Part shown: one piece after another, positions 39,349 through 46,543 of the stretch
How the letters are laid out: every line of letters starts with the position of its first letter
How positions within the stretch are numbered: position 1 is the stretch's first letter
Assembly (NCBI GenBank): GCA_002269645.1
Contig: NIVC01000863.1
Span: 1-64,000 of the forward strand
Direction of reading: 5' to 3'
DNA length: 64,000 nucleotides
Source: Macrostomum lignano
Taxonomy: Eukaryota
Position numbers and translations under genes: made by a program
Notes under the pieces: generated by a model
Database searches by the model: none
Told to the model about the DNA's origin: nothing
The model's input: the letters and a program-made list of their open reading frames with translations, nothing else

Positions 39349-40206
39349 TTACTGCTTTAACACGCCGATGATATCTGCGTAGACAGGGTGCTCAATCACG
39401 TCATCCTCGCCTGCAGCACCAGCAGCGCCATCAGATGATGTCGGCTGCTGCGGCTGCTGCTGCTGCGGCGGCTGCTGCTGCTGCGTCTGGTCGCCATCCG
39501 ACTCTGATGTTGGCGGTAGACTTGGCTTCGGTTTTCGATTCGGTTGCGAGCCCGGCATTGGCTTGTTGAGGCTCTCAGTGTCCAGGACAGCGTAGGGGCA
39601 CTCGTTCATATCATAGCTGCCGCCTGCAGCGTCACCCGTGGGGCTCTCTACGTTGTTTGGCTTTGGTTCCGGCTTGGGCTTCGGCGCCTTCGTAGGCTTT
39701 GGTTTCGGCGGCTTGCTTGGCGGCGGCAGCGGCTTGGCTGCTGGCGATTTGGGGCTCTTGACTGCTGGCGGCGAGGCTCCCGACGAGCTTGGGTCCATTT
39801 CATTGGCGTAGACAGGTTCTACTTGACTCTCGGGCCGGACAACATTGTACTCGCGATCCGGTGGTTCCGCATCTGGCTGCTGCTGGCTAAGGCTGAGTTG
39901 GTGGATCTTTTCAAAGACTTTGATGGCGCAGAGATCGTCTCGCAGGTACAGGTCGCTGCCGGTTTTCAGCTGCAATCGAATTGTTTGTTTTGGAGATGCT
40001 ATGAGCTGGAAGTCTTTATATTTATGGGGAACCCTGGCGCAAGGCCTTCGGCGACATGGCCAAATTCGGGGTTGGCCTTACGGGTGAGAATCGAATGCTA
40101 ATATACGGCGAATACGGCTAATAAAAAGTATAATCCTCACCTTCCCCATCTCAGACCGAGAGGACTTAGAAAAGATAAACTTGGAAGATAGCTTCGCCTT
40201 TCGCAT
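39349..40206 (-). CDS. Uncharacterised Tyr/Pro-rich adaptor-like protein, form B. Exons 40141-40206 (or from ATG 40149) and 39349-39969
   Basis: Donor AAG|gtgagg and acceptor ttgcag|CTG are both phase 0. The 206-aa non-repetitive terminal exon ends PVYADIIGVLKQ*, paralogous to 43818-44321. Confidence 0.65.
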
Positions 40207-40611
40207 TGCTGTGGCGGCTTGTTGCGAGCTGATGCTGTAAGCTCTGTTGCTTGTTTGCGAATGAGAAGATGAGCTGAAAATTTGAACACACTGCGCCGCT
40301 TGAATGCTGTTTACAGCCGTTTCTAAATTTAGCAATTAGCATATCACAGCTCAACAACAGACTGGGGGCCCTATATGTGTATAGTTCACTAGCATCGCAG
40401 ATGCTTATATACATGTAGGCTCTCTCTCTCTCTCTGCGATACAATTTAAGTGCAATGCCAAATGGTGTACAATATAGTGTACATTCATACAAGTGTGTGC
40501 TGTAGGTATTGTGTGGGGTGTGCAGACACATGAACTTCGAGGCAAAATTGCTCAAACTTCAAGTACGTGTACAATTGTAACTCGCTGTCTCAGGGATGTT
40601 GTAAATAACAA

Positions 40612-41536
40612 CATAGGCGTGGGAACGTTTCAAAAAGTGGGGGGGGGGCAGGTTCAGTGGCGGATTTAGGGGGGGGGGCGCAAGCCCCCTTTCGAGTTAG
40701 ATTTTTTATTTTTATGAGTACATAGGAAATGCACAACATGTACCGATTATTTTCAGAATTAGAGTTGTCAGCACTCATTTTGGCGCCGCAGGCACTCATT
40801 TTAGCGCCACAGACACTCATTTTGGCGCCGCAGGCACTCATTTTGGCGCCGCAGGCACTCATTTTAGCGCCATAGACACTCATTTTAGCGCCACAGACAC
40901 TCATTTTAGCGCCGCAGGCACTCATTTTGGCGCCACAGGAACTCATTTTAGCGCCGCATGCACTCATTTTAGCGCCGCAGGCACTCATTTTAGCGCCGCA
41001 GGCACTCATTTTAGCGCTGCAGGCAATCATTTTAGCGCCACAGGCACTCATTTTGGCGCCGCAGGCACTCATTTTAGCGCCGCAGGCACTCATTTTAGCG
41101 CCACAGACACTCATTTTAGCGCCGCAGGCACTCATTTTAGCGCCGCAGGCACTCATTTTGGCGCCACAGGAACTCATTTTAGCGCCGCAGGCACTCATTT
41201 TAGCGCCGTAAGCACTCATTTTAGCGCCGCAGGCACTCATTTTAGCACCTCTGGCACTCATTTTAGCGCCGCAGGCACTCATTTTAGCGCCGCAGGCACT
41301 CATTTTAGCGCCACAGGCACTCATTTTAGCACCTCTGGCACTCATTTTAGCGCCGTAGGCGCTGTTTTGTCGCCCTGCAGCAAAATGCATTCATGCAAAG
41401 CAGCAAAAACCAAAAATAAGAGTAAAAAATAAGCCAAAAGTCTACATTTTGCATTACATGTAAAATGTGGAGGGACCAGATACCATTACTGGGGGGCATG
41501 GCCCCACTGTCCCCCCTCCGTTCCTACACCTATATG
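40612..41536. mobile_element. 925-bp non-autonomous hAT-like element carrying the 21-bp minisatellite
   Basis: Perfect 8-bp TSD AATAACAA (40604-40611, 41537-41544). Imperfect TIR cataggcgtgggaacg / cgttcctacacctatatg. Confidence 0.8.
40768..41357. repeat. 21-bp minisatellite (ggcactcattttagcgccgca), about 28 copies
   Basis: Same unit as 5199-6757. Confidence 0.96.
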
Positions 41537-43730: not shown

Positions 43731-43817
43731 AATCGACATGATTAGCATAAAAAGCGCAGCAGGTATACATCAAATCTAACAAATCATGCAAAAAACGTGA
43801 ACGAAATGTTGCACTTC

Positions 43818-46543
43818 TCACTGCTTCAACACCCCAACAATATCGGAGTAGATCGGATTCAATCGCTCCTCTTCATCAGCAGCCGCCGAAGCCAGGGTCA
43901 GATTGCCAGTCGAGGCGGAGGCCACAGCAGAAGCCTGATAGGCGCCGTTCCGGGTTAACAGCTGCGATCGAGGCCGCGGTGCCGAGGACGGTGGGGCGAC
44001 TGACTGATGAAGCCGCTGCTGCTGCAAAGGTGGCGGCCCGGCCGGCTTGCTGAGGCTCTCAATATCCAGCACCGCATAGAGACCAGTCTGGGGGTCGTCT
44101 CCGTACAGCTCCCCCTCTTCATCAGGATTAGCATTGGGTTGCTGAGGCTGCTGAGGAGGAGGCGGCAGCTTAGCATGCATCCGAATCGATTCCGGCACCT
44201 CGTCTGGATCGATGTACAAATTCTCGTCCGAATCGGCGCCGCGCAGGTTATGGGTCTGCTGATGGCCAGCCCAGGACTGCATGTACTCGGCGTTCACGGC
44301 TGCCGCGGTGCCATTGCCGCGCTGGTGAGAGTTGAGGTGAGATAAAACACATATTAATGTGGGACACTTGGCTATTGTTGAAATGTAGCAAGCTGTGTCA
44401 GTTCAACTGGGATCTGTGTCAGTTCAACTGAGATCTGTGTCAGTTCAACTGGGATCTGTGTCAGTTCAACTGGGATCTGTGTCAGTTCAACTGGGATCTG
44501 TGTCAGTTCAACTGGGATCTGTGTCAGTTCAACTGGGATCTGTGTCAGTTCAACTGGGATCTGTGTCAGTTCAACTGGGATCTGTGTCAGTTCAACTGGG
44601 ATCTGTGTCAGTTCAACTGGGATCTGTGTCAGTTCAACTGGGATCTGTGTCAGTTCAACTGGGATCTGTGTCAGTTCAACTGGGATCTGTGTCAGTTCAA
44701 CACATGTGTCAGTTCAAATGAGATGTGTCAATTTAGCTGAGATGTGTCAGTTCAACTGGGATCTGTGTCAGTTCAACTGGGATCTGTGTCAGTTTAACAC
44801 ATGTGTCAGTTCAAATGAGATGTGTCAATTTAGCTGAGATGTGTCAGTTACACTGGGATCTGTGTCAGTTTAACACATGTGTCAGTTCAAATGAGATGTG
44901 TCAATTTAGCTGAGATGTGTCAGTTACACTGGGATCTGTGTCAGTTCAACTGGGATCTGTGTCAGTTTAACACCTGTGTCAGTTCAACTGAGATGTGTCA
45001 GTTTAGCTGAGATGTGTCAGTTCAACTGGGATCTGTGTCAGTTCAACTGGGATCTGTGTCAGTTCAACTGGGATGTGTCAGTTCAGCTGAAACCTGTGTC
45101 AGTTCAACTGAGATGTGTCAGTTCAGCTGGAACCTGTGTCAGTTCAACTGAGATGTGTCAGTTCAGCTGGAACCTGTGTCAGTTCTCAACTGAGATGTGT
45201 CAGTTCAGCTGGAACCTGTGTCAGTTCAACTGAGATGTGTCAGTTCAGCTGGAACCTGTGTCAGTTCAACTGAGATGTGTCAGTTCAGCTGGAACCTGTG
45301 TCAGTTCAACTAACACCTGCGTCAAGGCCCCAAAAGCATTTCCTAGCACTGAAATCGGTACATGTAGCATTTCACTGCCAAAGGTCAAGCCAGTATTTAA
45401 AATGAAACTTTTACAACAATAACCAACCATCAAGAGTCACCTCCGAAATGCTTGATTTAAAAGGCTTTTTAAAGGTCTTTTTATGCTTGGTTTCAAATTG
45501 GTACCAATGGTACATTCTATATTTTGCGGGCAACGAAGTCAGTGTTAGCGAACTTAAACAGGTAACAGGTTAACCGGCAGGTTGTGCGCAACAAAATCAG
45601 TCTGTAGAGCCTATTTTAGTTTTATTTATCAACATAGTCAAAATCTAACTTTCGAAAGAGTTTAAAAATGTAGTATAGTAAGACAAAACGTACTCGGTGC
45701 GCCTGACTCTTGAGATAGGTAAGAATACGGAGCTGAGAGTGAGAAGGGATGGGTGGTTGGGGTGAGATAAGAATAAAGGTGTACTGGGAGCCTACGTTGA
45801 GATGGTGAGATAAGGGTAAGACAAGGGTGAGATGGTGAGATAAGGGTGAGATGGTGAGATAAGGGTGAGATGGTGAGATAAGGGTGAGATGGTGAGATAA
45901 GGGTGAAATGGTGAGATAAAAGTGAGATGGTGAGTTAAGGGTGAGATAGTCAGAAAAGGGTGAGATGGTGAGATAAGGGTGAGATGGTGAGATAAGGGTG
46001 AGATGGTGAGATAAGGGTGAGATGGTGAGATAAGGGTGAGATGGTGAGATAAGGGTGAGATGGTGAGATAAGGGTAAAATGGTGAGATAAAAGTGAGATG
46101 GTGAGTTAAGGGTGAGATAGTCAGAAAAGGGTGAGATGGTGAGATAAGGGTGAAATGGTGAGATAAAAGTGAGATGGTGAGTTAAGGGTGAGATAGTCAG
46201 AAAAGGGTGAGATGGTGAGATAAGGGTGAGATAGTCAGAAAAGGGTGAGATTGTGAGTTAAGGGTGAGATAGTCAGAAAAGGGTGAAATGGTGAGTTAAG
46301 GGTGAGATAGTCAGAAAAGGGTGAGATGGTGAGATAAGGGTGAAATGGTGAGATAAAAGTGAGATGGTGAGTTAAGGGTGAGATGGTGAGAAAAGATTGA
46401 GAAAGGTGATAAAGATGAGATTAGAGATAAGGGTGAGATGTTAGATAATAATATATACGGGGATGAGAGCTCTCAAAGCACCCCGCCCCTTCATCACTCA
46501 CCCTAGGTCGCCATTTGCCATTGCGAAAACAGCAGCAGAGCAT
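43818..46543 (-). CDS. Uncharacterised Tyr/Pro-rich adaptor-like protein, form A, 181 aa. Exons 46502-46543 (MLCCCFRNGKWRPR) and 43818-44321
   Basis: Donor AGG|gtgagt and acceptor ctcaccag|CGC are both phase 0, and the intron is filled with minisatellites as in the other genes here. The terminal exon ends PIYSDIVGVLKQ*. Confidence 0.7.
44394..45312. repeat. 21-bp minisatellite (gtgtcagttcaactgggatct) and derivatives, intronic
   Basis: Direct inspection. Confidence 0.93.
45795..46440. repeat. 19-bp minisatellite (ggtgagatggtgagataag), intronic
   Basis: Direct inspection. Confidence 0.92.

What the first reader, a model, noticed from the sequence alone, without database searches (positions are those of the whole stretch)
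39349..46543. Candidate new family of small lipid-anchored phosphotyrosine adaptors made from duplicated terminal exons
Seen: two unrelated-looking disordered exons (43818-44321 and 39349-39969) share two short blocks, YAVLD(I/T)ESL(S/N)KP and P(I/V)Y(S/A)DI(V/I)GVLKQ-stop. Each has six tyrosines in acidic context (ENLYID, ELYGD, EYNVV, EPVYAN, SYDMN) and Pro-rich segments (KPLPPPSKPPKPK, LPPPPQQP). Both begin at phase-0 acceptors, so the 14-codon exon at 46502-46543 could splice to either. Known: LAT/PAG-type adaptors are membrane-anchored disordered chains of SH2/SH3 ligands; YxN binds Grb2 SH2; EPIYA-like sites are Src/Abl substrates. Inference: a TM-less adaptor system with switchable tails. 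I recognise no homologue.
Basis: partly seen in the sequence, partly recalled or inferred. Interest (0 to 1): 0.8.

Follow-up and report, generated by a model that had tools for sequence, protein, structure and literature searches.

The report
Flatworm-only pair of small tyrosine-motif proteins
Two neighbouring, duplicated genes found only in the flatworm Macrostomum lignano encode small floppy proteins that share two conserved tyrosine-containing motifs; one carries a GAP-43-like fatty-acid anchor signal, but they are two separate genes rather than one gene with switchable tails, and their role as signalling adaptors is only a plausible guess.

Summary
A 14-codon exon (MLCCCFRNGKWRPR, GTGAGT donor) and two large terminal exons share the blocks YAVLD(I/T)ESL(S/N)KP and P(I/V)Y(S/A)DI(V/I)GVLKQ-stop. 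The window is Macrostomum lignano contig NIVC01000863.1.

The "one gene, switchable tails" reading is not supported. The transcript-derived GenBank models show two tandem two-exon genes. Gene A (181 aa) is the MLCCC exon plus tail A. Gene B (228 aa) has its own first exon, MRKAKLSSKFIFSKSSRSEMGK (40206-40141, GTGAGG donor), plus tail B.

All three genomic copies keep this order. Their exons are 99-100% identical and free of frame-breaking indels, while the flanking unique DNA carries indels. In the shared blocks, 10 of 20 identical residues use different codons, so the duplication is old and the peptides are under selection.

UniProt's automatic labels ("IRS-type PTB", "Costars") fail every test: Pfam, PDB sequences, hhalign and AlphaFold (disordered, pLDDT about 50). 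No hidden exons were found. An exhaustive HMMER search of 1.84 billion proteins finds no relative outside M. lignano.

The best reading is a lineage-restricted pair of disordered, probably membrane-tethered proteins built from short motifs. Phosphotyrosine docking is plausible (Y:F = 12:1; YxN, YxxP and Yxx-hydrophobic sites) but untested. Interest is moderate to low.

The parts
46502..46543 (-). Gene A exon 1: MLCCCFRNGKWRPR. It has three N-terminal Cys followed by basic residues (net +4), which makes it a putative S-acylation signal. A GTGAGT donor follows.
   Evidence: It is 100% identical in all three genomic copies. It forms the N-terminus of GenBank PAA71552.1.
44322..46501 (-). Gene A intron, mostly 19-bp and 21-bp minisatellites.
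   Evidence: The coding-potential scan finds no coding-like island here.
43818..44321 (-). Gene A terminal exon (tail A): 167 aa plus stop, disordered. Tyr sites are YMQS, YIDP, YGDD, YAVL, YQAS and YSDI.
   Evidence: AF2 gives pLDDT 50. GC3 and codon signal are coding-like.
44043..44078 (-). Conserved block 1 in A: YAVLDIESLSKP.
43818..43856 (-). Conserved block 2 in A: PIYSDIVGVLKQ plus stop (the C-terminus).
43017..43748 (-). 21-bp minisatellite just 3' of tail A, probably part of gene A's 3'UTR. GenBank calls it a 243-aa 'protein' on this contig.
   Evidence: L002 6459-7190 corresponds to window 43748-43017.
40141..40206 (-). Gene B exon 1: MRKAKLSSKFIFSKSSRSEMGK (net +6, basic/aromatic/Ser), followed by a GTGAGG donor. 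A second in-frame ATG would give MGK|LKTGS.
   Evidence: The copies differ here by a single synonymous change. The donor matches the species consensus GT[G/A]AG.
39970..40140 (-). Gene B intron (171 bp).
   Evidence: It is 91-98% identical between copies and carries indels.
39349..39969 (-). Gene B terminal exon (tail B): 206 aa plus stop. One predicted helix (RDDLCAIKVFEKIHQLSLSQ) is followed by a disordered Pro/Lys/Gln-rich chain. Tyr sites are YLRD, YNVV, YANE, YDMN, YAVL and YADI.
39559..39594 (-). Conserved block 1 in B: YAVLDTESLNKP.
39349..39387 (-). Conserved block 2 in B: PVYADIIGVLKQ plus stop.
40241..40342 (-). ORF upstream of gene B's ATG (MLIAKFRNGCKQ...). It may be a decayed relic of the ancestral MLCCCFRNG first exon. 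It is not constrained.
   Evidence: tblastn E=5. Indels occur here between copies. The DNA alignment is unconvincing.

Best explanation
The locus holds two tandemly duplicated two-exon genes that appear restricted to Macrostomum. It is not one gene with alternative tails. Each gene has a very short 5' coding exon, which acts as a membrane-targeting head, and one large 3' exon encoding an intrinsically disordered chain.

Gene A (181 aa) begins MLCCCFRNGKWRPR. This is a Cys cluster plus basic residues of the GAP-43 type, which would be S-acylated and hold the protein on the cytosolic face of membranes (inferred). Gene B (228 aa) has replaced that head with a different one, MRKAKLSSKFIFSKSSRSEMGK. 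This is a polybasic/aromatic patch, or an MGK... myristoylation start if the second ATG is used (inferred).

Selection has preserved only a collinear string of short linear motifs since the old duplication: an E-x-x-Y site, a PxxP stretch, YAVLD-x-ESL-x-KP, and the C-terminal P-x-Y-x-DI-x-GVLKQ.

The most likely mechanism is that the proteins act as membrane-proximal docking scaffolds. Their tyrosines, once phosphorylated, would recruit SH2 proteins. Y-[A/S]-x-[L/I] fits the Csk/Src/SHP-type class in both paralogues, YxN fits the Grb2 class in B, and YxxP fits the Crk/Nck/Abl class in A. The proline runs would recruit SH3 proteins.

Shown: the gene structures, the paralogy, the disorder, selection on the motifs, and the absence of relatives and of any folded domain. 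Inferred: lipidation, membrane location, tyrosine phosphorylation and the binding partners.

My sub-confidences are about 0.8 for two separate genes, about 0.8 for lineage-restricted disordered motif proteins under selection, and about 0.3-0.35 for the phosphotyrosine-adaptor function.
For: Gene models:
- PAA71552.1 is exon 1A plus tail A.
- PAA75768.1, PAA71551.1 and PAA87007.1 are exon 1B plus tail B.
- The models derive from RNA-seq transcriptional units, and A and B carry different unit names.
- Both donors fit the species consensus GT[G/A]AG.
- All three genomic copies keep the order exon 1A, tail A, gene B.

Constraint:
- Exons are 98.9-100% identical between copies with no frame-breaking indel. 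Unique non-coding segments are 91-99% identical with 1-14 gapped positions.
- Substitutions between the window and L001 are 4 synonymous and 2 non-synonymous.
- Between the paralogues, 10 of 20 identical residues in the blocks differ synonymously, while the rest of the proteins has diverged beyond recognition.

Protein properties:
- Disorder and no domain: AF2 mean pLDDT 50, pTM 0.18 for both. Pfam finds nothing at E<=10. No TM segment.
- No other coding-like island on the minus strand between 39.3 and 47 kb.
- Y:F = 12:1 in the two tails.
- The GAP-43 N13 motif MLCCMRRTKQVEK is sufficient for acylation and membrane targeting (PMC2994833).

No relatives: only M. lignano proteins are found among 5.8 billion clusters and 1.84 billion representatives.
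Against: - There is no experimental evidence for acylation, membrane association or tyrosine phosphorylation.
- SH2/SH3 motif classes are short and degenerate, and the assignments come from general knowledge, not from a test here.
- Y-x-x-hydrophobic motifs preceded by acidic residues also fit AP-complex sorting signals and Atg8-interacting motifs.
- Alternative isoforms were filtered out of the GenBank annotation, so a minor exon 1A to tail B isoform is not excluded. It would be in frame.
- Gene A is not annotated on the window's own contig.
- Transcriptomes of other Macrostomum species appear not to be in the databases searched, so 'restricted to M. lignano' may really mean 'restricted to Macrostomum or macrostomorphs'.
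Confidence: 0.5

Rival explanations
1. One reading: one gene in which the 14-codon MLCCC exon is alternatively spliced to either tail A or tail B (mutually exclusive terminal exons). This would give two lipid-anchored adaptors with different tails.
For: The donor and both acceptors are phase 0 and on the same strand. GenBank annotation was stripped of alternative isoforms. An older ab initio model (P0003) fuses parts of tail A and tail B into one gene.
Against: Transcript-derived models give tail B its own first exon, ATG and consensus donor in all three genomic copies. A and B belong to different transcriptional units. Tail A ends in a stop followed by an apparent 3'UTR. P0003 is frameshifted and needs a non-consensus GTTTA donor. 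Matching phases are expected anyway after a whole-gene duplication.
Confidence: 0.15
2. Tail B is the C-terminal tail of a conventional FRS2/Dok-type docking protein with an IRS-type PTB domain, as UniProt's automatic name says. The N-terminal exons of that domain would simply have been missed.
For: UniProt names A0A1I8HGR0 (228 aa) and P0003 'IRS-type PTB domain-containing protein'. By eye, FIFSK...G...DDLCAIKVFEKIHQ loosely resembles F-S-F-E-x-G-R-R...G-x-G...helix of FRS2 and Dok1 (sequences). FRS2 is also N-terminally lipidated and has multiple Tyr sites (general knowledge).
Against: - Pfam finds no IRS/PTB hit at E<=10 in P0002, P0003 or any upstream ORF.
- phmmer against PDB sequences finds nothing.
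- hhalign of an FRS2/FRS3/Dok1 profile against either possible reading gives probabilities of 0.04% and 0.7%.
- AF2 shows a single helix and no beta-sandwich.
- Only about 50 non-disordered residues exist, against about 100 needed.
- There is no coding-like island upstream.
- The upstream region carries indels between copies.
Confidence: 0.04
3. The genes and proteins are as in the best explanation, but the conserved tyrosine motifs are not phosphorylation sites. Instead they would be Y-x-x-hydrophobic sorting signals for clathrin-adaptor mu subunits, acidic-flanked Atg8/LC3-interacting motifs, or an LD-like helix-binding motif. The proteins would then be trafficking or autophagy adaptors, or regulators of some flatworm-specific partner.
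For: YAVL, YSDI and YADI all fit Y-x-x-hydrophobic. The C-terminal motif is preceded by DEEE or EDD. AF2 predicts a short helix over Y-x-DI-x-GVLKQ. Conservation extends well beyond the tyrosine (ESL-x-KP, GVLKQ-COOH), which is more than most SH2 sites need.
Against: The Y:F ratio of 12:1 and the additional non-conserved YxN, YxxP and YxxM sites alongside PxxP runs are more typical of phosphotyrosine scaffolds. There is no direct evidence either way.
Confidence: 0.25
4. These are fast-evolving orphan ORFs with no specific function, meaning transcribed low-complexity sequence. On this view the shared blocks reflect gene conversion or chance.
For: There is no homologue in any other organism. The composition is low-complexity Pro/Gln/Ala. 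The genome is rich in minisatellites, which generate spurious ORFs.
Against: Half of the identical block codons differ synonymously, which argues against recent conversion. BLASTP gives E=1e-08. The ORFs are intact and indel-free in three copies while the flanks accumulate indels. GC3 and codon-usage signals are coding-like. The splice sites match the consensus.
Confidence: 0.06

Closest known systems
GAP-43 (neuromodulin) N-terminal acylation motif, and more broadly the GAP-43/BASP1/MARCKS class of lipid- or polybasic-anchored disordered membrane proteins
   Same: Gene A starts MLCC-C-F-R-N-G-K-W-R-P-R. GAP-43 starts MLCCMRRTKQVEK, and its first 13 residues suffice for S-acylation and plasma-membrane delivery (PMC2994833). 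Both are small, natively disordered and lack a TM segment. Gene B's head (KLSSKFIFSKSSR) resembles a MARCKS-type basic/aromatic/Ser effector patch (from memory).
   Different: There is no sequence homology beyond the first 4 residues, no IQ motif and no Pfam neuromodulin hit. The tails here are acidic to neutral and rich in Tyr and PxxP motifs, not calmodulin- or PIP2-binding.
Vertebrate transmembrane adaptor proteins LAT, PAG/Cbp, NTAL and LIME
   Same: These are small proteins with no folded domain. They are palmitoylated and have a disordered cytoplasmic chain carrying several Tyr motifs (YxN for Grb2; Y-[S/A]-x-[V/I] for Csk in PAG) plus proline-rich stretches (family descriptions in PMC2213442 and PMC2194117, listed; motif classes from general knowledge).
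   Different: There is no transmembrane helix, no juxtamembrane CxxC and no detectable homology. The anchor would be purely lipidic or electrostatic and at the extreme N-terminus. The family is known only in a flatworm.
FRS2/FRS3 and Dok docking proteins (IRS-type PTB family)
   Same: They combine N-terminal lipid anchoring (FRS2 begins MGSCCS) with a long disordered multi-Tyr tail (YxN, YxxP). UniProt auto-names gene B's product as a member.
   Different: The defining PTB domain is absent.
Costars domain (ABRACL / ABRA C-terminus)
   Same: There is a 24-residue local match, GKL-x8-RDD-x-CA-...-FE (10/24 identities, pairwise E=0.002). It explains UniProt's 'Costars' name on the 72-aa fragment P0009.
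   Different: The match covers less than a third of the 81-residue domain. There is no Pfam hit and no PDB phmmer hit. AF2 shows one helix only.

Membership tests
IRS-type PTB docking proteins (FRS2/Dok/IRS) | A PTB domain of about 100 residues (7-strand beta-sandwich plus C-terminal helix) recognisable by profile. | tested here: not met
   Pfam finds nothing at E<=10. PDB phmmer finds nothing. hhalign against an FRS2/FRS3/Dok1 profile gives probability 0.04-0.7%. AF2 shows a single helix. No upstream coding island exists.
IRS-type PTB docking proteins (FRS2/Dok/IRS) | A disordered tail with multiple SH2-binding Tyr motifs. | tested here: met
   YNVV, YANE, YDMN, YAVL and YADI in B; YIDP, YAVL and YSDI in A. 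The match is at motif level only.
LAT/PAG-type transmembrane adaptor proteins | A single N-terminal transmembrane helix with a short ectodomain. | tested here: not met
   The maximum Kyte-Doolittle 19-residue mean is 0.93 for A and 0.48 for B.
LAT/PAG-type transmembrane adaptor proteins | Palmitoylated cysteines next to the membrane anchor. | not testable with these tools
   Cys3-5 are present in A only, and B has no N-terminal Cys cluster. Acylation itself needs an experiment.
LAT/PAG-type transmembrane adaptor proteins | Sequence homology to a known member. | tested here: not met
   No hit outside M. lignano.
GAP-43 / neuromodulin | An N-terminal MLCC acylation motif followed by basic residues. 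| tested here: met
   MLCCCFRNGKWRPR against MLCCMRRTKQVEK. This applies to paralogue A only.
GAP-43 / neuromodulin | An IQ calmodulin-binding motif and the neuromodulin Pfam domains. | tested here: not met
   No Pfam hit at E<=10.
Costars domain proteins | A complete Costars fold of about 80 residues recognised by profile. | tested here: not met
   There is only a 24-residue local BLASTP match. Pfam and PDB phmmer find nothing. AF2 shows no fold.
Single gene with mutually exclusive terminal exons | A shared first exon spliced to each alternative 3' exon, in transcripts. | tested here: inconclusive
   The annotation supports exon 1A to tail A and exon 1B to tail B.

The most novel reading that the evidence does not exclude
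A flatworm lineage may have independently invented a domain-less, TM-less phosphotyrosine scaffold, a functional analogue of vertebrate LAT/PAG. After duplication, the two paralogues would have kept the same pair of SH2-docking motifs but swapped the membrane anchor. One would use a GAP-43-like S-acylation head. The other would use a polybasic/aromatic (MARCKS-like) or myristoylated head, giving differently regulated membrane residency for the same docking module.
Probability: 0.2. Interest if true: 0.55.

Novelty: new variant of a known kind. Interest (0 to 1): 0.3.

Why it matters
If the adaptor reading is right, this would be an invertebrate, convergently evolved counterpart of the lipid-raft adaptors that organise tyrosine-kinase signalling in vertebrate immune cells. 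It would sit in a transgenesis-capable regeneration model. It would also be a tidy natural experiment in which the same motif cassette hangs on two different membrane anchors.

More modestly, the locus illustrates how lineage-restricted disordered proteins keep only short linear motifs after duplication. It also exposes three annotation problems in the M. lignano resources: two conflicting automatic domain names, a missing gene call on this contig, and minisatellite 'proteins'. As it stands this is an uncharacterised orphan gene pair whose function is inferred from motifs alone.

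Tried and rejected
1. Reading the coordinates on the + strand gives no such peptides.
2. A second MxCC first exon: the only other candidate (53764, MIYCCC) is antisense to a U2AF1 exon and ends in a stop, so it is chance.
3. Pfam on both isoforms, on P0002/P0003 and on five intervening ORFs found nothing.
4. PDB sequence searches with both possible N-terminal readings of gene B gave only NLRP2 PYD at E=0.28, which I dismissed, and otherwise nothing.
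5. Conservation profile against the second copy (L001) to reveal hidden exons: the copies are too similar (98-100% in unique DNA) to discriminate. A coding-potential scan replaced it.
6. A motif-only profile (A3) in the word-indexed search yielded 1 candidate and no hit. The query was too short, so the result is uninformative.
7. The two marginal hits of the exhaustive search (P0005, P0006) are a Pro-rich protein and a repeat protein from Logan and ENA metagenomic contigs, so they are noise.
8. Literature and supplement searches for Mlig024206, Mlig014716, Mlig031284 and Mlig012887 returned nothing.
9. A canonical poly(A) hexamer within 700 nt of either stop: none found, which is not informative for this species. 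The bacterial promoter/terminator scan is irrelevant here.
10. The 'relic first exon' upstream of gene B is only weakly suggested and is kept only as a note.

Full report
**Observation**

The coordinates in the finding give nothing on the + strand.

- 46543..46502 encodes MLCCCFRNGKWRPR and is followed by a GTGAGT donor.
- 44321..43818 encodes a 167-aa chain ending ...LNPIYSDIVGVLKQ-stop, behind a ...caccAG acceptor.
- 39969..39349 encodes a 206-aa chain ending ...HPVYADIIGVLKQ-stop, behind a ...ttgcAG acceptor.

All three boundaries are phase 0. Each tail has six tyrosines, with only one Phe and one Trp between the two tails.

The similarity between the tails is significant. BLASTP gives E=1e-08. 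The best 12-mer identity is 10/12, against a maximum of 8/12 in 200 shuffles. A full alignment shows that the tails are collinear beyond the two blocks: E-x-x-Y, then AK-(P)LPPP, then YAVLD-x-ESL-x-KP, then P-x-Y-x-DI-x-GVLKQ.

**Where we are**

The window is a minisatellite-rich eukaryotic genome. Protein searches identify it as Macrostomum lignano. The window is 100% identical to contig NIVC01000863.1 of GCA_002269645.1.

The locus lies between an O-fucosyltransferase gene (+ strand, below about 36.8 kb) and a U2AF small-subunit gene (+ strand, about 53.1-55.0 kb). Two further genomic copies exist, L001 (NIVC01001157.1) and L003 (NIVC01000254.1). Both have the same order: exon 1A, tail A, gene B.

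**Gene structure**

Exon 1A plus tail A is, residue for residue, GenBank PAA71552.1 (181 aa, BOX15_Mlig024206g1). It differs from the window by one V/A change.

Tail B belongs to a different model: PAA75768.1, PAA71551.1 and PAA87007.1 (228, 228 and 227 aa; Mlig014716, Mlig031284 and Mlig012887). Its first exon is MRKAKLSSKFIFSKSSRSEMGK at 40206..40141, ending in a GTGAGG donor.

These models come from RNA-seq transcriptional units (StringTie/TACO, TBONE, TransDecoder). Both donors match the species' cis-donor consensus GT[G/A]AG (PMC8629364).

The evidence therefore favours two tandem two-exon genes over one gene with switchable tails. A minor exon 1A to tail B isoform would be in frame and cannot be excluded without junction data.

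**The PTB question**

UniProt auto-names the 228-aa protein and an older fused model (P0003) 'IRS-type PTB domain-containing', and it names a 72-aa fragment 'Costars domain-containing'. I tested both labels.

- Pfam finds nothing at E<=10 in any of these proteins or in the intervening ORFs.
- phmmer against all PDB sequences finds nothing relevant.
- A profile of authentic FRS2, FRS3 and Dok1 PTB domains (sequences verified; alignment) aligns to neither possible reading of gene B's N-terminus. hhalign probabilities are 0.04% and 0.7%.
- AlphaFold predicts a single helix (residues 31-50) and a short C-terminal helix in an otherwise disordered chain, with mean pLDDT 50 and pTM 0.18. Gene A gives the same result.
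- A codon-usage/GC3 scan of the minus strand from 39.3 to 47 kb finds coding-like signal only in tail A, tail B and one minisatellite artefact.
- The stretch just upstream of gene B's ATG, which P0003 used as a 'PTB' exon through a non-consensus GTTTA donor, carries 7-, 3- and 24-bp indels between copies.

The Costars label traces to a 24-residue local match, GKL-x8-RDD-x-CA...FE (10/24 identities, pairwise E=0.002). This covers less than a third of that domain. Neither membership holds.

**Selection and age**

Between the three genomic copies, the coding exons are 98.9-100% identical. Their only gap is an in-frame 3-bp poly-Gln gap. Unique intronic and intergenic segments are 91-99% identical with 1-14 gapped positions. 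Substitutions between the window and L001 are 4 synonymous and 2 non-synonymous.

Between the paralogues, 10 of the 20 identical amino-acid positions in the two blocks use different codons. The remainder of the proteins is no longer alignable. The duplication is therefore old, and the blocks are maintained by purifying selection rather than by recent gene conversion.

**Relatives**

Two word-indexed searches of 5.8 billion clusters found only M. lignano proteins, and so did an exhaustive HMMER profile search of 1.84 billion representatives. The two marginal hits are unrelated Pro-rich and repeat proteins.

There is one caveat. The M. lignano proteins have no transcriptome-derived duplicates in the collection. 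Transcriptomes of other Macrostomum species are therefore probably not represented, and 'M. lignano only' may mean 'Macrostomum only'.

**Mechanism**

Shown: two small, domain-less, TM-less disordered proteins with conserved Tyr-centred linear motifs and a Y:F ratio of 12:1.

Inferred for gene A: its head, MLCCCFRNGKWRPR, has the same design as the GAP-43 acylation motif MLCCMRRTKQVEK. That 13-residue motif is sufficient for S-acylation and membrane delivery (PMC2994833).

Inferred for gene B: its head is strongly basic (net +6) with an F-I-F core and serines. It could bind acidic membranes electrostatically. If the second ATG is used (good context, GAGATGG), it would yield MGKLKTGS..., a possible myristoylation start.

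Inferred for the motifs (motif classes are from general knowledge and were not tested):
- YAVL and Y(S/A)DI fit the pY-[A/S]-x-[L/I/V] class.
- YNVV and YANE fit pYxN (Grb2 class).
- YIDP fits pYxxP (Crk/Nck/Abl class).
- YDMN fits pYxxM.
- PSKPPK fits a class II SH3 ligand.

I therefore commit to 'membrane-tethered phosphotyrosine/SH3 docking scaffolds' as the most likely function, at roughly one chance in three. The main alternative is that the same Y-x-x-hydrophobic motifs with acidic flanks serve as sorting or Atg8-type motifs.

**Verdict**

Three points stand: the two tails are paralogues, they have no known homologue, and paralogue A has a lipid-anchor-like head. The 'duplicated terminal exons / switchable tails' architecture is not supported. 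Whole two-exon genes were duplicated, and only A has the Cys head. The phosphotyrosine-adaptor idea remains an untested motif-level inference.

The genes are already in GenBank as hypothetical proteins. This is an uncharacterised lineage-restricted gene pair of moderate to low interest. It would rise to moderate interest if lipidation and tyrosine phosphorylation were demonstrated.

Noticed in passing
window 43017-43748 (-); also L003 5234-5881: GenBank annotates a 243-aa protein here (215 aa on L003) that consists entirely of a translated 21-bp minisatellite, (PYTLFTD)n, immediately 3' of tail A. The real 181-aa gene A is not called on these two contigs. This looks like a longest-ORF artefact inside gene A's 3'UTR. 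Indirectly, it shows that a transcript covers this region.
   Followed up: partly
window 40141-40206 and 39898-39969 (-): Gene B's N-terminus, GKLKTGSDLYLRDDLCAIKVFEKI, has a 24-residue local similarity to the centre of the Costars domain of human ABRACL (10/24 identities, pairwise E=0.002). The match spans the exon 1B/tail B junction. This explains the conflicting UniProt auto-names ('Costars' against 'IRS-type PTB') for the same sequence.
   Followed up: yes
window 40241-40342 (-): An ORF just upstream of gene B's ATG reads MLIAKFRNGCKQ..., against exon 1A's MLCCCFRNGKWR (ML + 3 residues + FRNG). It may be a decayed relic of the ancestral Cys-cluster first exon. Support is weak (tblastn E=5 window-wide), and the region carries indels between copies.
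   Followed up: partly
window 40141-40149 (-): A second in-frame ATG lies two codons before the end of exon 1B, in a strong context (GAGATGG). It would give MGK|LKTGS..., with Gly2 and Thr6, a possible N-myristoylation start. The M. lignano spliced leader also ends in ATG (PMC8629364). Trans-splicing onto the phase-0 tail B acceptor (TTGCAG, which fits the reported trans-splice motif [T/C]TNCAG) would therefore also be in frame.
   Followed up: no
whole window, e.g. 2210-2755, 5173-6903, 12301-13065, 15805-17037, 38182-39257, 40771-41360, 44393-45311, 45815-46448, 54000-54700, 57477-58295, 58926-60335: There is an extraordinary density of 19-69-bp minisatellite arrays in introns and intergenic DNA. 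They produce long spurious ORFs in several frames on both strands. Array length is the main difference between the three genomic copies of the locus (about 80-93% identity in arrays, against 98-100% in unique DNA).
   Followed up: partly
window 24600-29300 (+), 32980-36780 (+), 53160-54950 (+), 57080-58830 (-): The neighbouring genes are a 5-oxoprolinase/hydantoinase gene, a GDP-fucose protein O-fucosyltransferase gene, a U2AF small-subunit gene and an SLC6-type transporter gene. Their order is conserved in all three genomic copies where the loci extend that far.
   Followed up: partly
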